Assembly (NCBI RefSeq): GCF_002571385.2
Contig: NW_019217786.1
Location: 1,203,021-1,267,020 of the forward strand
Origin: Stylophora pistillata
Lineage: Eukaryota
Direction: 5' to 3'
Length of the DNA stretch: 64,000 nucleotides
Shown here: positions 923 through 14,700 of the stretch, piece by piece
Position numbering within the stretch: the stretch's first letter is position 1
Layout: the number at the start of each line of letters is the position of its first letter
Program-made: the position numbers and the translations under genes
Notes under the pieces: generated by a model
Database searches by the model: none
What the model was told of the DNA's origin: nothing
What the model saw: the letters and a program-made list of their open reading frames with translations, nothing else

Positions 923-1081
923 AATTCAGCCCACGCAAAAGTTGTTGCAATCGGTATTACTTCAGAAGTGGATCTAGCAGAACTTATAATGATGGCTGGA
1001 GAAGATCATTATGTGTTTGTGGACAAATTTGAAGATCTCTCCGACCATATTCGAGAAGTGCTGGACAAAGTGTGCGATTAG
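923..1081 (+). CDS. Terminal coding exon of a von Willebrand factor A (VWA) domain gene; upstream exons lie outside the window
   Basis: Acceptor ttttaacag| then NSAHAKVVAIGITSEVDLAELIMMAGEDHYVFVDKFEDLSDHIREVLDKVCD*. This is a typical VWA C-terminus (xxAIGI, ELxxxA, final helix ending in Cys). Not in the ORF track. Confidence 0.8.
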   Translation, partial: NSAHAKVVAIGITSEVDLAELIMMAGEDHYVFVDKFEDLSDHIREVLDKVCD

Positions 1082-3349: not shown

Positions 3350-4906
3350 TCAAAGTTCATCTCCAGAATCTAAATTTATCTCCTTCATCTCTGCATCCCA
3401 AGTACTGTCATTTTGGGAATCATTCTGAAAGCCTGAATAATGCACTTGTGATTTCCACTTAGTCAACCTCTGTGAAAGAGCAAACAGCAAGCCTGTGATA
3501 GCACTTGTTACTGCCAGACTTCTAAAAAGAATTCTTGGTCCATAACTATCATAAATGGCCCCTCCACCAAAGCCTGCAATAAGTTTTCCTAGACCAAAAT
3601 GTGTTGCCATAACCAAACTCATGACTGTTGCACGCATTCCCTCAGGTGAAATAAGACCACCATAGGATGTTGTAGCAGCCCACATTGCTCCAAAAGTAAC
3701 ACCGTGTAGAGGTTCAACAGCCAATATATACCAGGCATTGTGAATAAATGAGTATAACACATATCTAATGGTATAGCAAACAAATGTCAAGTATAGGACA
3801 CCATGATGGCCAATACGATCAATTAACTTCCCAGAAAAAAACATAACAGGGACCTCTGAGACACATGTCATGCAAAGAGTAAGGCCCATTAACAAATGGC
3901 TTCCATTCATGTCTTGAATAAACCAAAACAAAAATGTGCCAATCGTTGAAAAACTTGCTCCCATGATGAGGATTGCCAACAAAAATGTGACAATGCAACA
4001 GTCAGAGAGAATGATACACACATTCTGGAAAATCTTGGGCTTGGATTCACCCTCTAAATATTCCAGTGGCAACTTAATTACTGTTATGAAAGCTGCAATG
4101 TTGAACAACAAAAAACCACAGAATGCTATGAAAAACTGACTCTGATTTGAATTCTGGGCAGACTGATCAATTGTGAACCCTGACAAAATTGCAATACTTC
4201 CCCATCCGACAGCACCCCACAGTCTTTGCTTGCCATAGTCACCACTTCTGCCAATATCTGTCAAGTATTTAACCGTGGCCGCATCAGCCAAGGAATTCGA
4301 GCCATCGAATAATGACCATACAAAGGAAAGAACAATAATAAGAAGAAATACATCGTGGTTGTCCCCACTTCCTACAGTTTTGGCGATATCCGTCGTATTT
4401 CCACCTAAGTCATCTGTACAGTTTTTTTCTGCAAAAGACGATGAGTCGTTATCTGGATTTATAGACGACAATTTTTCAATTGCAACCTTTTCCTTTCCAG
4501 TTATGTTCAAGAATGAGTGATTACTACAAAAGTTTGTTGCCGTGTTTAGTTCTTCGTTGGGCCGAACAAACACCAAAGAAAATTGAAGAGCAGTTGTAAC
4601 GATACACATGATTAACATAGCAATCCTGTGTTTTCGATATTTGTCCGCTAAAGCGCCAGCGATGGGTGTTCCAATGAAATTCGCCAGTGGTTGTAGTCCG
4701 ATTACAAAGCCGGTCTGTTCAGCTGATAGTCCCACGTGGCGTAGAAACACAGGAAAGAATGGCTGGATACAAGCTTTCGCACTAAACGCAAAAAAGTAGT
4801 AAAGCTTTAGTACCAAAAGATCCTTGTTAATCCGGAAAAGGCGCCCCAGATCTAACTTATTTTGTGTTCGAATTCCATAGTGTTTTTCCTCCTCTAATCC
4901 TTCCAT
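3350..4906 (-). CDS. MFSD6: Major facilitator superfamily domain-containing protein 6-like transporter, single exon, 518 aa
   Basis: About 12 hydrophobic segments with motifs GALADKYRKHR, DYGKQRLWGAVGWG, SEVPVMFFSG and EPLHGVTF typical of the MFSD6/MFS_1_like family. Confidence 0.88.
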   Translation of the reverse strand: MEGLEEEKHYGIRTQNKLDLGRLFRINKDLLVLKLYYFFAFSAKACIQPFFPVFLRHVGLSAEQTGFVIGLQPLANFIGTPIAGALADKYRKHRIAMLIMCIVTTALQFSLVFVRPNEELNTATNFCSNHSFLNITGKEKVAIEKLSSINPDNDSSSFAEKNCTDDLGGNTTDIAKTVGSGDNHDVFLLIIVLSFVWSLFDGSNSLADAATVKYLTDIGRSGDYGKQRLWGAVGWGSIAILSGFTIDQSAQNSNQSQFFIAFCGFLLFNIAAFITVIKLPLEYLEGESKPKIFQNVCIILSDCCIVTFLLAILIMGASFSTIGTFLFWFIQDMNGSHLLMGLTLCMTCVSEVPVMFFSGKLIDRIGHHGVLYLTFVCYTIRYVLYSFIHNAWYILAVEPLHGVTFGAMWAATTSYGGLISPEGMRATVMSLVMATHFGLGKLIAGFGGGAIYDSYGPRILFRSLAVTSAITGLLFALSQRLTKWKSQVHYSGFQNDSQNDSTWDAEMKEINLDSGDEL

Positions 4907-5830: not shown

Positions 5831-6791
5831 NNNNNNNNNNNNNNNNNNNNNNNNNNNNNNNNNNNNNNNNNNNNNNNNNNNNNNNNNNNNNNNNNNNNNN
5901 NNNNNNNNNNNNNNNNNNNNNNNNNNNNNNNNNNNNNNNNNNNNNNNNNNNNNNNNNNNGTACTGTTGTTGTATTTCAGACTGCTGTTGCTCTCAGGCAT
6001 TGAAGAGCTCTTTAAAAATTGTAAAATGAATCAAAGAGCTTGGGTTATTGAACAGAAACGACAAACAAAACAATTTGCTTCTTTTAAAGAGAGAACTTTA
6101 TTTGAAAGTGGTAGATAAAGCAGGTTCGGGGCCCACGTGAAATGAAAACGAGAGTAGTCTATTGCAACACTCTGCTATCATTGACTTCGCGCATGATTAA
6201 TACTCTTCAATTGGCCTAACATGACATATTTCAGAGTTCCTGCTCAATTCGACTTCATAAAAGTTATTTTTGAAGAGCATTATTACGAATCTATAAAGTT
6301 GAGTAAATATACCCAGTACATCATACATGATTTTTTCGTCCAAGCAATACTTGGATTTGTCAAATATCATAATGATAAATAATTCTTTTTCCAGCGTTCC
6401 AGTTTGTAACAGGTCCAAAGTGATGTTCCTAAAGACACGTTAAAGGCTAATGAAGCCTACATTATCCTTAAAAGATCTAATGCAGTGTTAGCTTTCTGAT
6501 ATAAATACTAAACTTATCTCAGCTACTTTCTCCGCCAAACATGTAATGATATAAATCAAGTATAGCGCAGGCCATTTCTGACAACTTTTTGAACACTTTT
6601 AATCTACAATTTTCCTATCAGGAGGAATGAGTGGTGTTGTTAGAGAAACAGTCTCGAACGAAAACTTCTACAAACTCACTCTTGCAACATTCGAAGCAAG
6701 AACAAACATAATCATATGTGTTCTAGGTCGTTTCGCGTCGTTTTATCGAATAATAAGCCAAGCTGAGTTACTTCTATAAATCTTTTCATGG

Positions 6792-6856
6792 TCAGCCGTG
6801 GCAAATTAAGTTGATCACTTTTTTGAGCTCGTTGCTAACGCCGCTGCTGCAGCCGC

Positions 6857-6888
<32 letters not shown>

Positions 6889-9800
6889 CGGCGACGTCGA
6901 CGCCGACGGCGGTCATCACACTCGTCCTCATCATCATCACGACGACGACGTTTGCGGTCATCTCCGTCATCATCATCATCGTCCTCACAGCACTTGCCTC
7001 CTGAACTGGTCTCGAACGTCAGAATAAGATCGCGATCATTTCGCCCGGTAAGTACTCGAAGCCCAAGAACGTTAACGGAGCCAGCTTCACCTATACCTAA
7101 GCCGATAACTCTGGCATTGAATGTCTGGGAGAAATTAAAAAGAAATAATTTTAAACCTTAAGAACTTAGAACAAGTTTTTGTTGATCAAAAACAGAAATC
7201 TCACCCTGACTAACAATAACTCAGAATGTAAATTTCCTGAAGCACTGGAAGGCGCGTTTGATCAATTTTCTCATTGTTTTGATTGCGCATTTGATAGGAG
7301 GTGATGCGAGTTTTTACATTAATGTAGTCCCGCATTATTCTTGACAGTCGGTTGAAAATTGCTTCCTACAATTAAGGGCAAATCGACATGCTATAGACAG
7401 TGACTGAACTTGTGATCATTACACTTTATCGTCCTACAGTGTTGAACGGTAGTGTAACGTGTAACAGTTGAAGTTCTGCGATCAACAATTAACAGCCATG
7501 ATCACGCCATGAAAGGCAATCAGGAGTCTGAGTCCCACATATTCTTCGGGCTTGGAGTTCAAAGTCGAGAGCTCTGATCCTTTTTTAGAGTCATCCTTGT
7601 TCTTAGTCTCTCTCCCGATTCCCTCTCTTGGGAACGAGGTTGCATCAAATAAAATTTGAAATTTATAGTTTGAAATAAACTTAAATTTGAAATTAAATTG
7701 AATTTTAAAATATGAAGCGATAATGAAGTCCGGAATCTGAACGGGTGCACTAAGGAATTACCTAATATACGATTTGTAGTGTTACGACAGAGAAAGTAAA
7801 CACTACAGTCATGATATTACTAATCATTTCCTCCAATATACTCACCGAGACATTTCTCAATTCCTGTGCTGGCAGAACAAGTGAATCAGTTCCACCAAAA
7901 TTCACACCATCAGTTACAAACACGACTACTTTTTGTGCGTTATCGCGGTTTGCGGAGCTAAGTAAATTCTTGGCTTCTTCTATTGCCGTATTTATCACTG
8001 TAGCTCCGGCAGTAAATTGTAAGCTGTTTATCTGTCTCTTAATCTCAGATCGAACTCTTGTTACTCTATCACTGAAGCTTGATGTTAGACTATTTATCTG
8101 GTCATCAAAGGCAAAGACGATGACCCGTGCGCCATTTGTTTTGGAGATTTTGATGTTATCCACTAACGTTGACAGAAATGTCTGTAGTTGTCTAAATTGG
8201 TTGTCGTTCATGCTGCCAGACACATCTGCTGCTATTACGATGTCTAACTTCTTACTGCATAAATATGCTGGGAAAGGAAAGAAAAGGAAAGGATAAATAA
8301 GTTATTTCAACTAGAAAAATTAATCACAATGGCAAATAGAGCTCAAAACATGAAGAAAGTGGGCCCGCTTCAAAACCATATCTTTCCACCTACTTGTAGA
8401 TTTAAAAGAGCTTTATTTTCCTGTTGATAGATATTAATTTTCGCCAGTCTAAGAAGCACCAGAAGTCGCTACCTTAACGAGTTCATCACATATAAAGCAG
8501 TTTTCAAATGAGTTTCGAAAACCTAAACCAAAACAATCACAGCGGCCAATAACAAGAAAAGTTTACATTATCCTTAACAATTAGAACTCGAAGGAGAAAA
8601 CCGGCAACCTGATTAATATTAGTCGTTTGAAACGAGCTTTATATCTGATTGGCTGAGAAGTAGGCGCGAGTTTTCTTGACCAATCACAGAGTGAAGTAAA
8701 GTAAAATAAAGTTTTCCAGAATAACTTTCGATACTCAACTGAAAACTTCTTTTTCTGTCTATTTAAATCAGTTTTCAGTACGTGGCCAGGGGAAAAATGT
8801 TTTTCTCCAGAGCTGAAATCGTAAACGGGTTTTGTCATAATTGAGGCAAGGCAAAGGAACTTGTGTTACGAAATGAGACATTTCAGCTTTCAAATTTGCT
8901 TTTTTTACTTCATAAAAAAGAAAGAAATTACGAAATTGAACAACAGACAGATCATCTTTTTACTGGCACCAAATCTTCGCTATCTCAGATTATAAAAACA
9001 CCAGCGATGTCTGTTTTACTGATGTCATGGAAGAGAGGTTTGACCTTTTCGCTCATAAGTTATACTGCTTACTGTCTGCCATACAATTCTTATGATATTA
9101 GATTGGAGAATTTGGTATTGGATCATTACCAAGCTTATCTGCTTCACATTTTATTGAAGGAGAAAATCTGTCTCGGTTACTCATGGGAGTTAAAAGGTTT
9201 ATAATAGTTCTGACGTAGAAGACTGCACAAAAATATGCGAGGCTCGAACAACTTGAACAATATAAGGCAATTCAAGCATCAAGGATAGCGAATAGTGAAC
9301 TTTTTTTTCTTAAATCAACCCCTTTCAGATGACGATAGTTTTATATCGCGATAATTTTCTTGAAAATTTCGACTACCACTGACGCTGATTCAATTAATAT
9401 TGCCAAGCGATCTTTCGAATTCGCTCACAGGAAGAAAATTTCAGAGCCAATAAATTTGCACGTGACCATGTTTTGTTCGCAATCAAATATTTTTAATTAC
9501 AATAATATAAGACCTTTTTGAAAGAATAGCACGGCTCATCTGATGATTTCTCGATGCCTTTTAAAAATATTTTCTTTGGTGTAGAAAAAGATTATCAGGG
9601 AGAAAAATGTTGCCGATCAGTATAATAGCGTCCACAAATAAGTTGTTCTACTAGAATGTATCTAAGTCTTGTAATACTGAGGGCAAGCGTAATATCTGAC
9701 TGCGTGCATTTTAACACTTATCACTACAGCTCCAACGAAATAGAGCGTGCAGTACTTTTCACGACCGACTTATTTCATATTCATACACTGAAAATGTACT

Positions 9801-11760
9801 TATTTCAATTGAAACATGAATTTATCGAACATATAGCGAGTATATATGTTATACTGTCATTCGGCTGATGATGAAAAAAAAACTGTTTGAAATCAATTTT
9901 AAAATTAACTGCTAGTAACTTGATTGGTAATAGGACAGAAATTATCTGACAGAGAAAAAAACTACCTGATGAAAAATGGGAATTATTTTGATCACAGAAT
10001 AACTTTTTTAAGGCTTCCAAGTTTTTGTTTGTTATCATATTGTTTAGGGTTTGGGTAAGCTACATCATTTTAGTTTCCACTTATAAAAAATCAGCTTGTG
10101 TTCGCGCATCCTTCTACTGATGAATAGCAACTTCCTTTATCAACGATTGATTACACGACATTCCATGCACTAAATGACCTTCCAATACATCTTTAAGCTT
10201 TCTAGTTTCCAGCTGCATACCAAAATGTGTATCATCATTTGTTTTTTTCCTTGTCACGTGAAGCTTTGACCGGGCTTCGGGATTGCATTTCTGACAAGTG
10301 AATGAGTCATGACTGTGGTTTACCGCGGTACTTCTGTTGAAAATAAGCTCAGCTTTTTCGTTCCTGCGGTGGTTCTAAATCGAGCTACAACAATTGAAGG
10401 AATTTTTCACCCCTAAATATTGACAGGAAACACTCGTCTATTTTTTATAGCAATCAGACAAAACTATATGGGTTTAATCACTGAAGCGACATCCCAGAAG
10501 TTTCCAAAACCACCAACGAAAGAAAAGTTAATCTGACCACTCAATGACTTTATAATTGAATGCTCTTTCAACTTGTCGAACGTTTTAACCTGATTGAAGT
10601 AATGCTGCAAAAAAATCGTTTCAACTAAATATCACTAATTGATGTTAAGACTCCAAAAATGCACCAAAACGCACAGGCATTTGTTGTTTTTAAGAAAAAT
10701 CTTCTTTGGGGGATATTTTTGTTGGAAAGACATTTGATATTAGCGCCCTTCATGGCTGAGCAATACAGCTTTTAGAAGTCTGTTTATTTCGTTGTTATTT
10801 TTAGGTTTATCATATCTTCCGAGGAAGGATAAAGAAGGTTGCCAAGCTTTTGTGGTATTCTCTAGAGAGAGGGGCATCAATTTGTTGCGAGATTCAGTTT
10901 CCGAAATTTGGCCGCGAAAGTCCATGAAGGTCAATTAGATTGAAAAGACGATATCAAGACAACTTTCGTGAGTTGATTAATGAAAGACTGATTTCATTCT
11001 GGAATAAAATATTTGCCTCATTGCAGGAACTGAACCAATCACCCAATAGTTCTAATTTTTATCAAAAACCTCAATACTAAGAAAGAAACCGACACCTGAA
11101 GATAGTTTATGGCACTAAGAGAAAAGTTTTCACACAATTTGAGACCGAACGAAATCTCCAACACGAGTGCAGTGATCATCTCTCATCCTGAATTTATTGT
11201 AGACGTTTTCAATTTGCGCCTTTACAAAAACACTTGAAGCTAAAAAAGGCTTTGCACTGATTATAATTCTCTTATCTAAGCGATCAATGATAAATTTAAT
11301 TTGTTATTTCAGTTGCCCCGCCGACGCTAAAACAGTTACTTTAGAAACTCAAATTCTCACCGCATATTTAGTTTGTTCTTATGGTGGTAATATCCTTGAA
11401 TAAATACGACTTTGAAATTTAACTTTAACACCAATCCAGTTTCCATTAACTGGCAAAGACAGCTTGATAGAAAGCCAAAAAACTTACGAGTAAAAGAACC
11501 GACTAAAAGAACCCAGAAATAGGATAAAAATACGAAAACTATAACTTTTATCAAAGCACGTACTCACCCTCTGCTTCTCCACTAACACACAAAACCACAA
11601 GAACAAGAGCAGCGCCTACAACTTGAGGGTTAAGAAAACAGAAAGGCGTTAAAATCATTTACGAAAAACATGCTTTTTACGCCCTGTATATACAGCTTGT
11701 TTATAAATCCTGGCGAGTTCTCCTGCGATACATAAAAAACATCTTACTTTTCCTCGCCAT
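6792..11760 (-). CDS. Secreted single-VWA-domain protein (~273 aa) with alternating poly-Asp/poly-Arg insert
   Basis: Exons 11760-11748, 11621-11568, 8267-7846 and 7124-6792 with GT-AG sites and matching phases (1,1,0). Signal peptide MARKIVGAALVLVVLCVSGEAEA; MIDAS DVSGS...T...TDG; C-terminus CCEDDDDDDGDDRKRRRRDDDEDECDDRRRRRRRRDDDDDDDDDDGGC...LICHG*. Confidence 0.85.
8492..8750. repeat. Degenerate MITE-like dispersed repeat in VWA intron
   Basis: Approximately inverted ends gcagttttcaaatgagtttcgaaa / tttcgatactcaactgaaaact, with internal ccaatca/tgattgg motifs. Confidence 0.5.
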
Positions 11761-14700
11761 GCTGAATTTCTGCCGAGATGGCAACCTTCATCTAATATCT
11801 GCAAGCTCAACTGAAGTCATAAATGGTTCACATTTTATTCTAGTCTACATTATATTGAACCGACCCGCAAACACTCAAAATCTGTCATTCATCCTCTCTG
11901 TCCAATAGCTGGCCAGTATTGTTGCACTCGTCATTTCATCTTCCTTACCGAGAACGTGTTAATAATAGATATCTGGGGATATTTCATGGGAATATCAATT
12001 TTTTTGAAGACAGTGTTAATTGTCACGTTGCATAACTGATTTAGTTTCCTTATTTGAATGATTTTTTTCGTTCTTTTCTTCTTTTTTTTTTAAGGAAACT
12101 TTATGAAATGATTCAATATTGGCTAAATATTTGCAACTTAAGGGAAGCGTCATCACTTTTCAAAATATGGGCTCTTACAAACAACTTTGAAGAGGACAAC
12201 GTGGTGTTCTTTTTTTTGTCGTGGGAAAAAATGTTTAACAATGATCCATTTCTCTGGTAGTAAATAACATTAAAATATTTCTACAGGGTAAATTATAAGT
12301 AATTTTTTGTTCTGTGCCATAATGCTGTTCTACCTCAGTTACAACAAAAGAAGTTTTTTTTTTAAAACATTGGGTACAGAAGTACAGTCATGTCCAACTG
12401 TACTAAGCGCACGAGAGCAGAGCTCTTGGCCACTGACTCACGTTTTGTCGGTTTAACAGCTGTGTAACCCACGCGAGATGTTGTTACATGAAATAAAATG
12501 TTTGTATAGAACGCGAGCCGAAAGGCGAGTAGTCTTTGCGTTCAAAAATTCGCCCAACCAGTCCAGGAGAGTTTTCATGCTGGTAAACCGATAGAAGGTG
12601 CATTTCGTTGCTTTTTTTAATTATAAAATGGTTCAGTTTTCTATCATTTTACCTCCTCAAAAACGAGATACATTTTGACCAGTAAGTGTATGTAGTTGCT
12701 CAATTATTTCTTGATTTAAGATTTTACGAACATTCGGAGAGGTTGTCAGAATTCAATTACTGTTGCTCAAATGATAAATAATAACGATATAAATAATTAC
12801 CTTTATTCTTTTCAAACCCTTACCAATTGTTTAAGCCAACGTAACAATCATCTTTCCTCATTCAATTTTCTCAGGTGAATTATGACAATTATCGGCTAAC
12901 TGAGAAATATAAAAGGACCCCCCCTGGATAATTCGGTTCGTGTTGCTAACCAGAAAAATTTGATCACTCAGACCTTCATACTACGCTGTCATAGCTTGTA
13001 CAATTGGAAAGCGATCTCTGATAGACACGACGGGGTACTTCACCGGACATATCTCACCGCTTGGATGGAACGCTTCACTCTTAAGAGAGGTTACACCTCG
13101 CACACTGATTGGCGTCAAGCAGTGATACTGTTCACATCATTGCATTTCTCTGGTCAAAAGCTGGTCGTTTTATACCTAACGGCATGCATGACTTTTAGCC
13201 GTTCATTTCGTCGAATAACTCAGTAGGCGTTTTAAGGCAAGCATGTTAGTCATAAAATTACTCAGTCCTCCTGTTCAATCCACAGTAACTTCCTACTTTA
13301 CTGTTGGTAGAGCGTAGTACAGCAGTCTTAAGAGATATTCTGTGGCACACTTATTCATAATAATCACTTTTTTCCCCCATATTCGTTTGTTTAGACACTT
13401 CACACTGTGACACGGCTCTGGTATACCGATCGAGTCTGTCCCGCGCTGCGTAACGCTTCAAATACTCAGCGTAACGCTTCAGATACTCAGCAATATCTTG
13501 GATGGTTTGGCCGGTAGACGCTCAAAGGAAATTATACGCTTCAAGAGAAAATTTTCTCTTGACGCTTTTGCCGCACATTCGTTCGCTGTCTTTCACAAGC
13601 TGAGTCAGCGAACAACCATGTCGATTACGTAAAAGCGGTTACGCTGGCAAATATTGAAGAGTTTGTAATGGGGAGAGTGTGATAGGAAACGAAGAGGAAT
13701 TAATTTCTCATGAGGAATTGTTTTGAAGGAAATGCCTCTGTCTTTTATCCCCGTCTATCCGTTTGCTAACTTTGTTGTTTTTCAGTGATTTCACCGCGTT
13801 CAAATTTAGGCTATTTTCCTTGATTTTCAACGTTATCCAAAATTCCAAATATTACCCACCCACAAAAGCATGTAATCAATCATGACTTCCAAACAAACTT
13901 TGATATTTTCGACGTGACCACTCTTACGCAATACAATCTTCACCTGCTCCTCGGATCTTGAGCTTTGAATGCCGTTTATTAAAGCATTTCCTTTTCCGCT
14001 ACGAAACGCGCATAGTTTTACGCCTCACTCTGTTTCGAAATTAAACATCAACAGCATCTATCGTATTGATCCAAATATTTTTTATCGAATTACGAAGCAA
14101 CCTCCCCCCTTTTACCGGGTGGAAACAACTGATATATAATTTGATCAACGACGTTGATCTCTCTTTGTTGTGTTTATACACACAAAACTGCCTTGAGCTA
14201 GTATAATTAATGATTGCCTCTTAACGGCACGGATATGATCATAAATTCACTTCAGTATTGTTGGATAACTGTTCGAATTTGACAGAACAAGTTTACATAG
14301 TAAGTTTGATCGATGCGAATCAAAAACTTTGTCGGCAGTGAACGGAAATTTCTTCAACTGTATATGACAAAAAGATGCAAGTGCATGTGGAACAACGATA
14401 GATTTGAAATTAAGGTTTTACCCGGTACAGTAGAAAAATTTCGCGATGCGTGATGGTTCATCAATGGTTTTTTTTGCAGAGGTTGTAATTATGCAAGGAA
14501 AATTAAGGTCGCATGAAATGCTAAAAATGGCCGCGTGCCTTCTCGTTCTACCCTAGAAATACTCTTTACTTTGTTCAAAAGGGTACAACAAGCACAAATT
14601 TGAAATGTTGATGGATTTTTATTGCTTGATTGAATGTGAACGTGTTGGGAAGTCATAATACATGACATTTTTTTTCCCTTCCGTGATACCTTAACATCGT

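What the first reader, a model, noticed from the sequence alone, without database searches (positions are those of the whole stretch)
6792..7124. Secreted VWA protein with alternating poly-Asp/poly-Arg blocks: candidate biomineralisation protein
Seen: a signal peptide, an intact MIDAS VWA domain and, between the last beta strand and the final helix, a Cys-bracketed insert CCE-D6-G-DD-RKRRRR-DDDEDECDD-R8-D10-GGC. The paralogous exon at 923-1081 has no such insert. Known: Asp-rich proteins and VWA proteins occur in coral skeletal organic matrix, R-X-K/R-R is a furin site, and oyster Pif couples a VWA part to a cleaved D/K/R-rich aragonite-binding part. Inference: a polyampholyte loop whose Arg blocks mask the Asp blocks until convertase cleavage exposes or releases Ca2+-binding peptides. 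The ORF track misses this exon.
Basis: partly seen in the sequence, partly recalled or inferred. Interest (0 to 1): 0.8.

Follow-up and report, generated by a model that had tools for sequence, protein, structure and literature searches.

The report
Coral skeletal VWA protein, Asp/Arg loop
This is the last exon of a Stylophora pistillata gene for a small secreted protein that has already been found in the coral's skeleton; its loop of alternating aspartate and arginine runs is real, transcribed, and seen only in Stylophora and Pocillopora among the corals found here, while the other stony corals found carry a purely acidic loop at the same place.

Summary
Window 6792-7124 (minus strand) is the terminal exon of a four-exon gene identical to S. 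pistillata XP_022783323.1 (273 aa). All three splice joints appear in RNA contigs from four studies.

The protein has a signal peptide and one VWA domain with an intact MIDAS. A 48-residue, four-cysteine loop (E-D6-G-DD, RKRRRR, DDDEDEC-DD, R8, D10) sits between strand beta6 and the last helix.

The biomineralisation reading is already published. The protein was sequenced from cleaned skeleton (Peled 2020) and named SpiUSOMP12 (Mummadisetti 2021). Neither main text mentions the Asp/Arg loop.

- Syntenic orthologues occur in robust and complex stony corals (Orbicella, Desmophyllum, a poritid, others). All carry an acidic, cysteine-bracketed loop at this site, with almost no Arg or Lys.
- The Arg blocks occur only in Stylophora and Pocillopora. 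There they are nucleotide-identical, while the acidic tracts vary even between alleles.
- All 13 Arg codons are CGN (8 CGT). They pair with the GAY Asp runs as hairpins, which suggests an origin by fold-back inversion of a (GAC)n repeat.

Convertase cleavage at the Arg blocks is plausible but untested. Calicoblast expression could not be checked.

The parts
11748..11796 (-). Exon 1: 5' UTR of at least 36 nt, then ATG at 11760 and the first 13 coding bases (M-A-R-K plus one base).
   Evidence: Joint 11621|11748 in RNA contigs of three runs.
11568..11621 (-). Exon 2: the rest of the signal peptide.
   Evidence: Joints 8267|11568 and 11621|11748. SignalP-positive in the Peled 2020 supplement.
7846..8267 (-). 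Exon 3: N-terminal cysteine C26 and the VWA core, with MIDAS residues D37-x-S39-x-S41, T112 and D142.
   Evidence: Pfam PF00092, E 1.6e-17. Family alignment. AlphaFold2 pLDDT 80-92. Foldseek hits to TRAP, MIC2, collagen VI and integrin I domains.
6792..7124 (-). Exon 4, the finding: VWA strands beta5-beta6, the charged loop, the last helix with C271, and the TGA stop at 6792-6794.
   Evidence: Joint 7124|7846 in four runs.
6849..6992 (-). The 48-residue loop (residues 208-255), bracketed by C208/C209 and C255 with C232 in the middle. It has 27 Asp/Glu and 14 Arg/Lys.
   Evidence: Predicted disordered. One RNA contig (run X4) spans it with 111 nt instead of 117, still in frame.
6939..6956 (-). 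Basic block 1, RKRRRR (codons CGC AAA CGT CGT CGT CGT). It fits the R-X-K/R-R convertase consensus.
   Evidence: Nucleotide-identical in three Stylophora alleles and in P. verrucosa.
6888..6911 (-). Basic block 2, R8, built only from CGN codons. R7 in Pocillopora.
6858..6887 (-). Acidic block 3: ten GAT codons in the reference allele. Other alleles have a mixed D/G/E/Y/N tract of similar length.
6120..6791 (-). 3' UTR of about 0.67 kb. The end is approximate.
   Evidence: RNA contigs cover 6300-6837 and run on beyond. The transcript contig L017 tail maps near 6145.
3350..4906 (-). Neighbouring single-exon MFSD6-like transporter gene. It is not part of the protein. It was used as the synteny anchor that shows orthology across corals.
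   Evidence: The same neighbour lies downstream in L013, L015, L016 and L022.

Best explanation
What it is:
- The exon ends the S. pistillata gene for SpiUSOMP12 (XP_022783323.1). This is a secreted single-domain VWA protein that is built into the skeleton's organic matrix.
- It belongs to a family found in both robust and complex stony corals. In this family a metal-binding (MIDAS) VWA domain carries a disordered, disulfide-bracketed, strongly acidic loop between strand beta6 and helix alpha7.

Most likely working (inferred):
- The VWA domain docks the protein onto framework or acid-rich matrix partners.
- The acidic loop binds Ca2+ or the carbonate mineral.

The Arg blocks:
- Two CGN-coded Arg blocks entered the loop in the common ancestor of Stylophora and Pocillopora. 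They most likely arose by fold-back inversion of the Asp-coding (GAC)n repeat.
- They fit the furin-type consensus and lie in an exposed loop of a secretory protein. I therefore infer that they are cut in the secretory pathway and trimmed by a carboxypeptidase.
- Each of the three acidic blocks holds a cysteine, so the pieces would stay tethered by disulfides, much as proinsulin loses its C-peptide. Until they are cut, the Arg blocks would partly neutralise the Asp runs.

Shown: gene model, transcription, family, conservation pattern, codon and hairpin pattern, and (from the literature) presence in skeleton.

Inferred: Ca2+ or mineral binding, cleavage, trimming, disulfide map, masking.

The confidence of 0.45 is for the whole mechanism. 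The identity of the gene and protein is near certain.
For: Identity and expression:
- Exons equal P0013. Accession and names. Splice joints in RNA contigs of four studies.
- Skeleton proteomics in PMC7115838 and PMC8086859.

Family:
- Orbicella XP_020615288.1 and Desmophyllum KAJ7363594.1.
- Unnamed coral contigs L013, L014, L015 and L022. L013, L015 and L022 keep the MFS gene downstream.
- On the MFS neighbour-gene tree, L013's species is sister to Stylophora plus Pocillopora (support 99/99). L015's species groups with Porites and Montipora (97/95).
- Every orthologue with the last exon in hand has an acidic Cys-bracketed loop at this site. In the four the script measured it is 29-34 residues with 15-16 Asp/Glu and 0-1 Arg/Lys. 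L013 and L022 show the same by eye.
- MIDAS residues and the terminal cysteines are kept in all rows that cover them.

Arg blocks under constraint:
- Both blocks and all four loop cysteines are present in 3 Stylophora and 4 Pocillopora sequences, while the acidic tracts differ in length and sequence.
- There are 0 nucleotide differences in the 13 shared Arg/Lys codons between the genera. Synonymous divergence elsewhere in the gene is about 0.24, so about 3 differences are expected (p about 0.02-0.03).

Origin:
- 13 of 13 Arg codons are CGN, against 14 of 27 in the rest of the gene plus the neighbouring gene (Fisher p 0.003). CGT is 8/13 against 2/27 (p 0.0006).
- In P. verrucosa the Asp run and the Arg run form a perfect 12-bp inverted repeat with an 8-nt loop.
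- The Stylophora insert folds at -61.4 kcal/mol, z -4.3. The Arg-free L013 insert does not stand out, z -1.2.

Cleavage is feasible:
- Signal peptide present. The R-X-K/R-R motif occurs twice. The loop is predicted disordered.
- The genome holds at least 36 matches to the convertase P domain above the cut-off.
- Precedent: Pif is cut at RMKR, and its VWA part binds the charged Pif80 and a carbonic anhydrase (PMC11291548).
Against: - No data here show cleavage. Both published studies used trypsin, which cuts after Arg anyway, so they cannot reveal convertase-made ends.
- Arg-free orthologues show that the family works without any such site.
- The Arg blocks neutralise only about half of the loop's acidic charge, so 'masking' is partial at best.
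- Flanking acidic residues and disulfides could hinder a convertase.
- The lack of synonymous change in the Arg codons could reflect constraint on the nucleic acid (a hairpin) rather than on the protein. With 13 sites it is only marginally significant.
- Skeleton proteome lists contain some obvious intracellular carry-over, so inclusion alone is not proof of function.
- Calicoblast expression could not be checked.
- The AlphaFold2 model is of low confidence for residues 176-258.
Confidence: 0.45

Rival explanations
1. The loop is not cut. It works as an intact, blocky polyampholyte. The Asp blocks bind Ca2+, and the Arg blocks bind carbonate, sulfated polysaccharides or the very acidic CARPs. 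In this way the protein bridges framework and mineral, or drives Ca2+-dependent coacervation that stabilises amorphous carbonate, as shown for Pif80.
For: [quoted passage not shown]
- PMC8086859 reports spatial interactions of the VWA-domain proteins, USOMP12 among them, with CARPs and STPCA2 in the skeleton.
- The Arg blocks and cysteines are conserved while the acidic tracts drift. That fits selection on charge blocks as such.
Against: - Runs of six to eight Arg in an exposed loop of a secretory protein match the convertase consensus, and would be expected to be cut unless protected (general knowledge of furin specificity).
- The loop is 48 residues on a folded domain, far shorter than Pif80.
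- Other corals manage without basic blocks.
Confidence: 0.3
2. The Arg blocks have no function of their own. They are a tolerated by-product of triplet-repeat instability (inversion and slippage of a GAC/GTC repeat) in a disordered loop where only net acidity matters.
For: - The codon bias and the inverted-repeat structure point to a mutational origin.
- The acidic tracts are length-polymorphic. The reference allele holds a pure run of ten GAT codons.
- Basic block 1 has 9 basic residues in P. damicornis, against 6 in the others.
- All the other corals found lack the Arg blocks.
Against: - Both Arg blocks and the extra cysteines are kept in both genera, across a synonymous divergence of about 0.24, while the neighbouring acidic codons change freely.
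- The R8 block uses four different CGN codons, so it is not a young pure repeat.
Confidence: 0.15
3. The acidic loop mainly regulates the VWA domain itself. The beta6-alpha7 loop leaves the domain on the MIDAS face, so a loop carboxylate could occupy the metal site as a built-in pseudo-ligand. That would keep the domain closed until Ca2+, mineral or cleavage pulls the loop away.
For: - The insert position is conserved family-wide at beta6-alpha7.
- The MIDAS residues are conserved.
- In integrin I domains the beta6-alpha7 loop and helix alpha7 are coupled to the MIDAS state, and ligands supply an acidic residue to the metal (textbook knowledge of integrin I domains, not tested here).
Against: - No coordinates or confident model of the loop are available; pLDDT is below 50.
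- Nothing here distinguishes this from simple Ca2+ or mineral binding.
- It does not explain the Arg blocks.
Confidence: 0.1

Closest known systems
SpiUSOMP12 (XP_022783323.1 / PFX34594.1 / UniProt A0A2B4SV97), S. pistillata skeletal organic matrix protein
   Same: It is the same gene and protein. All four window exons match it exactly. It is published as a skeleton protein with a VWA domain (PMC7115838, PMC8086859).
   Different: The main texts of the two papers that cite the accession do not describe the Asp/Arg loop, its cysteines, its convertase motifs, its orthologues or its origin. There are no hits for 'furin' in PMC8086859. The database names ('VHS3-like', 'Matrilin-3') are artefacts of the Asp run and the VWA domain.
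Pif (Pif97 + Pif80) of the pearl oyster and the related BMSPs
   Same: - A matrix protein that couples a VWA domain to a stretch rich in Asp and basic residues.
- Pif is cut at a dibasic site (RMKR).
- Its VWA part binds Pif80 and the carbonic anhydrase nacrein (PMC11291548).
- Pif80 forms Ca2+-induced coacervates (PMC5540247).
   Different: - There is no chitin-binding domain here; Pfam finds only VWA.
- The charged part is a 48-residue loop inside the VWA domain, not a separate 80-kDa C-terminal protein.
- The charges here come in long blocks, not in mixed DDRK repeats (PMC4971512).
- No specific kinship is shown beyond the shared, very widespread VWA fold.
- Cleavage is unproven here.
Coral acid-rich proteins (CARP4/5, SAARPs) and the acidic-loop CUB proteins of the S. 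pistillata skeleton
   Same: These are secreted coral skeleton proteins in which Asp-rich, low-complexity stretches sit in or beside folded domains. They appear in the same proteome lists. The CUB case was noted earlier in this scan (s1-771601).
   Different: - The host domain is different (VWA with MIDAS).
- The acidic part is short and bracketed by disulfides.
- I am not aware of poly-Arg blocks described in those families; this was not checked here.
Mussel byssus proximal thread matrix protein 1 (PTMP1); integrin alphaM I domain; TRAP/MIC2 and collagen VI VWA domains
   Same: These are the closest solved structures by sequence (PTMP1, E 1.7e-14) and by fold. They are extracellular MIDAS-type VWA domains that bind matrix partners.
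   Different: None is known to me to carry a charged insert at beta6-alpha7. Identity is only about 20-25%.
Proinsulin C-peptide excision and the charge-neutralising pro-piece of alpha-defensins (analogies of mechanism only)
   Same: - In proinsulin, basic sites inside a disulfide-bonded precursor are cut by convertases and trimmed by a carboxypeptidase, which leaves chains held by disulfides.
- In alpha-defensins, an oppositely charged pro-segment neutralises a highly charged mature part during export. Both points are textbook knowledge.
   Different: There is no homology. Here the segments that would be removed are the basic ones. Processing is inferred, not shown.

Membership tests
VWA domain (Pfam PF00092), MIDAS-bearing subtype | Significant match to the family profile | tested here: met
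   PF00092 at E 1.6e-17, 64.7 bits against a cut-off of 23.8. PF13519 at 2.6e-15.
VWA domain (Pfam PF00092), MIDAS-bearing subtype | MIDAS residues D-x-S-x-S, Thr and Asp | tested here: met
   D37-V-S39-G-S41, T112 and D142. T112 and D142 are invariant, and S39/G40/S41 nearly invariant, in the 15-row family alignment.
VWA domain (Pfam PF00092), MIDAS-bearing subtype | Alpha/beta Rossmann-like fold | tested here: met
   AlphaFold2 core pLDDT 80-92. Foldseek probability 1.00 to TRAP, MIC2, vWF A2/A3, collagen VI and alphaM I domains. The part after residue 176 is of low confidence.
Coral skeletal organic matrix proteins | Peptides identified by MS from cleaned skeleton | tested here: met
   Checked in the papers, not measured here. 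PMC7115838 Table 1 and supplement: 4 and 3 unique peptides, 10.6% and 8.8% coverage, insoluble fraction. PMC8086859 found it again.
Coral skeletal organic matrix proteins | Secretory signal peptide | tested here: met
   Hydrophobic N-terminus encoded by exons 1-2. SignalP-positive in the Peled supplement.
Coral skeletal organic matrix proteins | Expression in calicoblastic cells | not testable with these tools
   The held supplements of the Stylophora cell atlas (PMC8162421) do not contain the accession. Bulk polyA RNA holds the transcript.
Pif/BMSP family | VWA domain together with chitin-binding domain(s) | tested here: not met
   Only VWA-type families match exon 3, and nothing matches exon 4. 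The protein is 273 aa with a single domain.
Pif/BMSP family | Cleavage at a dibasic site that releases a carbonate-binding part | not testable with these tools
   The motif is present twice. No cleavage data exist.
Furin-type proprotein convertase substrates | R-X-K/R-R motif in an accessible part of a secretory-pathway protein | tested here: met
   RKRRRR and R8 lie in a loop predicted to be disordered. Signal peptide present. Convertase P domains are present in the genome.
Furin-type proprotein convertase substrates | Demonstrated cleavage after the motif | not testable with these tools
   The published MS used trypsin, which hides such ends.

The most novel reading that the evidence does not exclude
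A microsatellite inversion created a new processing device. A fold-back copy of the Asp-coding (GAC)n repeat, read as CGT, inserted poly-Arg spacers into an ancestral acidic loop of a coral skeleton protein. These spacers now act as convertase-excised, charge-masking 'C-peptides'. The mature Stylophora and Pocillopora protein would then be a three-chain, disulfide-tethered bundle of free poly-Asp tails on a VWA anchor. That would be a newly evolved pro-peptide system within a biomineralisation gene, datable to one coral lineage.
Probability: 0.25. Interest if true: 0.7.

Novelty: new variant of a known kind. Interest (0 to 1): 0.45.

Why it matters
The protein itself is already on the published list of Stylophora skeleton proteins, so it adds no new player. 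Three things are new and testable.
- **A wider family.** This 'uncharacterised' matrix protein belongs to a syntenic family found in both robust and complex stony corals. Its hallmark is an acidic, disulfide-bracketed loop grafted onto a metal-binding VWA domain.
- **A natural experiment.** One well-studied lineage (Stylophora and Pocillopora, the main laboratory models of coral calcification) has added two poly-Arg blocks to that loop. Arg-bearing and Arg-free orthologues can be compared directly for secretion, processing, Ca2+ binding and CaCO3 control.
- **A simple origin for a blocky polyampholyte.** The codon and hairpin pattern suggests one triplet repeat read on both strands. This may apply to other low-complexity biomineralisation proteins.

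If cleavage is confirmed, it would extend the theme of proteolytic activation of acidic matrix proteins (Pif in molluscs, dentin proteins in vertebrates) to corals.

Tried and rejected
- **Close paralogues.** tblastn of exons 3 and 4 against the window, and protein searches of the whole genome, found none. The best other VWA exon is 31% identical, and there is no second copy of exon 4. The plus-strand exon at 923-1081 is only a distant relative.
- **Earlier findings of this scan near the place:** none.
- **Cell-type expression.** The cell-atlas paper's held supplements (3 small files) do not contain the accession. Its main text does not mention VWA or furin. No other paper holds the accession, the names USOMP12 or 'VHS3-like', or the orthologue ids.
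- **Literature on furin or convertases in coral skeletal matrix.** A paper search gave nothing relevant.
- **More named species.** A word-based search with the family alignment added only unnamed fragments. The ENA contigs L013-L015 and L022 carry no organism names. I placed three of them only indirectly, through the neighbouring MFS gene. L014 stays unplaced.
- **L021.** It has a different C-terminus and no MFS neighbour, so I did not count it as an orthologue.
- **Non-calcifying anthozoans.** Whether they have an orthologue could not be tested. The named hits of the protein searches came only from stony corals, but most hits are unnamed.
- **AlphaFold2.** It gave no usable model of the loop or of residues 176-258, so no disulfide map or MIDAS distance was derived.
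- **The 41-nt direct 'module' repeat** is weak (66-76% in low-complexity sequence). I give it little weight.
- **Joined spliced model.** It was never typed or sent to a tool. Searches used single exons by reference, an open frame around exon 3, or the database protein P0013. P0013 was checked exon by exon.
- **N runs** were left alone.
Full report
**Observation**

On the minus strand, window 6792-7124 is one open frame that ends in TGA. It encodes, in order:
- the last strands of a VWA domain;
- GGK-CC-E-D6-G-DD-RKRRRR-DDDEDEC-DD-R8-D10-GG-C;
- a final amphipathic helix that ends in L-I-C-H-G.

The exon has no start codon, which is why the mechanical ORF list lacks it.

**Gene model**

- Exon 3 (7846-8267) is a VWA domain (PF00092, E 1.6e-17).
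- Two small upstream exons (11748-11760 and 11568-11621) encode the signal peptide.
- I did not send a joined model to any tool. A search with the open frame around exon 3 returned the database proteins. P0013 is XP_022783323.1 / PFX34594.1 of Stylophora pistillata, 273 aa.
- P0013 matches every exon exactly, including the two split codons. The introns are GT..AG.
- The window is therefore S. pistillata. The genome is about 398 Mb.

**Transcription**

- Eight runs on record as RNA, among 20 runs from 9 studies, hold the stretch.
- Contigs of four runs from four studies were laid on window 6300-11900. They show the joints 7124|7846 and 8267|11568. Three of them also show 11621|11748.
- The contigs break at the repeat (6838-6954). 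One contig (run X4) spans it with 111 nt instead of 117, still in frame.
- That length fits the 271-aa transcript variants P0001 and P0014.
- Depth from contigs cannot rank expression, and I make no claim on level.

**Already known**

- The accession occurs in two papers.
- Peled et al. 2020 (PMC7115838) list it among 60 proteins sequenced from cleaned skeleton. It is in the acid-insoluble fraction: 40 spectra, 4 unique peptides and 10.6% coverage in one preparation, and 3 peptides in another. It is SignalP-positive.
- Mummadisetti et al. 2021 (PMC8086859) found it again in BS3-cross-linked skeleton and named it SpiUSOMP12. They noted that the 'decarboxylase' name is wrong. They reported spatial interactions of the VWA proteins, this one included, with CARPs and STPCA2.
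- PMC8086859 has no hit for 'furin'. None of the passages I retrieved from either main text describes the Asp/Arg loop.
- So 'candidate biomineralisation protein' is correct, but not new.
- Caveat: such lists also contain evident intracellular carry-over. Two separate papers, a signal peptide and several peptides make this entry fairly solid.

**The family**

- An exhaustive profile-free search and cluster look-ups found single-VWA relatives in Orbicella faveolata (XP_020615288.1) and Desmophyllum pertusum (KAJ7363594.1). Several relatives lie on unnamed coral contigs.
- I read the last exon on four of those contigs.
- The MFSD6-like gene that follows the VWA gene in the window (3350-4906) also follows it in P. 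verrucosa (L016), L013, L015 and L022.
- It lies on a contig of the same recorded length (308,537 bp) as the VWA gene in Orbicella. In Desmophyllum the two genes carry consecutive locus tags. These are orthologues.
- On a tree of the MFS neighbour, L013's species is sister to Stylophora plus Pocillopora (support 99/99). L015's species sits in a clade with Porites and Montipora (97/95).
- L022's MFS is 93% identical to the Porites cluster representative.
- The family therefore spans both robust and complex stony corals.

Every member with the last exon in hand has an acidic, cysteine-bracketed loop at the same site.

| Group | Loop length | Asp/Glu | Arg/Lys | Loop Cys | Net charge |
|---|---|---|---|---|---|
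| Orbicella, Desmophyllum, L014, L015 | 29-34 | 15-16 | 0-1 | 2 or 4 | -14 to -16 |
| Stylophora and Pocillopora (7 sequences) | 40-48 | 21-27 | 13-16 | 4 | -6 to -13 |

The script could not parse L013, and L022 was read later. By eye both also show an acidic Cys-bracketed loop without Arg blocks.

The MIDAS residues, and the cysteines near the N- and C-termini, are kept in the rows that cover them. All full-length members have an even number of cysteines outside the signal peptide. This fits a disulfide that closes the domain plus disulfides within the loop; that reading is an inference.

**What varies and what does not**

- Three Stylophora alleles have identical VWA exons but very different acidic tracts.
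- The run of ten GAT codons is peculiar to the reference allele.
- In contrast, the codons of RKRRRR and of R7/R8 are letter-for-letter identical in all Stylophora alleles and in P. verrucosa, apart from one missing CGT.
- Synonymous divergence between the genera is about 0.24 in exon 3 and 0.22 in exon 4 before the loop.
- About three synonymous differences are therefore expected in the 13 shared basic codons. None is seen (p about 0.02-0.03).
- This suggests constraint, but it does not say whether on the protein or on the nucleic acid.

**Origin of the Arg blocks**

- All 13 Arg codons of the loop are CGN, and 8 are CGT. In the rest of the gene plus the neighbouring gene, 13 of 27 Arg codons are AGR and only 2 are CGT (Fisher p 0.003 and 0.0006).
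- (CGT)n is the reverse complement of (GAC)n read in another frame.
- In P. verrucosa the Asp run and the following Arg run form a perfect 12-bp inverted repeat around an 8-nt loop.
- The Stylophora insert folds far better than its shuffles: -61.4 kcal/mol, z -4.3, with none of 200 shuffles as good.
- The Arg-free insert of L013 does not stand out (z -1.2).
- Short palindromes and inverted repeats are also seen at the DNA level.
- The simplest reading is that fold-back (template-switch) copies of the Asp-coding triplet repeat became the Arg blocks. This would have happened after the split from the L013 lineage and before the Stylophora-Pocillopora split. It is an inference from pattern, not a reconstruction.

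**Structure**

- AlphaFold2 with the 15-row family alignment gives a confident VWA core (pLDDT 80-92).
- It places strand beta6 at residues 197-199, a disordered loop at 208-255, and the last helix at 261-272.
- Foldseek and a sequence search name the usual extracellular MIDAS VWA domains as closest: TRAP/MIC2, collagen VI, vWF A2/A3, integrin alphaM, and mussel PTMP1.
- In this fold, loops that follow strands leave on the MIDAS face. That is textbook topology; it was not measured here.

**Mechanism**

Shown:
- a secreted MIDAS VWA protein that ends up in the skeleton;
- an ancestral acidic loop;
- lineage-specific, conserved Arg blocks that match the convertase consensus;
- one cysteine in each of the three acidic blocks;
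- many convertase P-domain matches in the genome.

Inferred, and my preferred reading (about 0.45):
- The VWA domain anchors the protein to matrix partners, and the acidic loop binds Ca2+ or mineral.
- In Stylophora and Pocillopora the Arg blocks are cut out during export. The acidic pieces stay tethered by disulfides.
- Before cutting, the Arg blocks partly offset the acidic charge.

Rivals:
- an uncut blocky polyampholyte that bridges to CARPs or polysaccharides, or coacervates like Pif80 (0.3; PMC5540247);
- a tolerated by-product of repeat instability (0.15);
- the loop as a built-in MIDAS pseudo-ligand (0.1; not exclusive of the others).

The published MS used trypsin and cannot tell these apart.

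**Comparison with Pif**

The analogy with Pif holds at the level of design:
- a VWA domain plus a charged carbonate-binding part;
- a dibasic cut;
- a VWA that binds the charged part and a carbonic anhydrase (PMC11291548).

Membership fails, because there is no chitin-binding domain and the architecture is different.

**Verdict**

- The biomineralisation reading is confirmed by the literature and is therefore not new.
- The cleavage and masking mechanism is open.
- The family-wide acidic loop, the restriction of the Arg blocks to one lineage, and the inverted-repeat origin are new details of moderate interest.
Acidic loops grafted into folded domains may be a recurring design in this coral. 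I did not test that note.

Noticed in passing
window 3350-4906 (-): A single-exon MFSD6-like transporter gene (518 aa) lies directly downstream of the VWA gene. The pairing is conserved in Pocillopora, a poritid and two other unnamed corals. In Orbicella and Desmophyllum the two genes are recorded on contigs of equal length (consecutive locus tags in Desmophyllum). The NCBI model for Stylophora is shorter (488 aa) than the open frame.
   Followed up: partly
window 923-1081 (+); upstream VWA exon at G000:C3:1198363-1198761 (L009): This is the last exon of a distant VWA paralogue (about 25-28% identity) whose body lies before the window. It has no charged insert. More VWA exons lie near orthologues in other corals (L014 11992-12507, L022 20108-20477).
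   Followed up: partly
window 8544-8730 and 8918-9291 (intron 2): RNA-contig word depth reaches the thousands here, with many loose ends. This suggests high-copy repeat or transposon fragments inside the 3.3-kb intron.
   Followed up: no
L016 11240-11250 versus window 7846-7852: Pocillopora transcripts and NCBI models use a donor site two codons upstream of the Stylophora one. The exon 3 protein ends ...ELRD rather than ...ELRNVS.
   Followed up: no
window 6838-6990 (-); L016 12122-12250: The mRNA of the loop can form strong hairpins between the Asp (GAY) and Arg (CGU) codon runs. The z-score is -4.3 in Stylophora. P. verrucosa has a perfect 12-bp stem. Whether this affects translation or repeat stability is unknown.
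   Followed up: partly
L013 8223-8998 (-): A long tandem array encoding repeats of a motif like PALPRFTPLY lies about 1 kb downstream of the orthologous VWA gene in the unnamed sister-lineage coral.
   Followed up: no
L017 ends (1-19 and last ~25 nt): The Logan transcript contig carries Illumina adaptor sequence at both ends, so its true length is slightly shorter than recorded.
   Followed up: no
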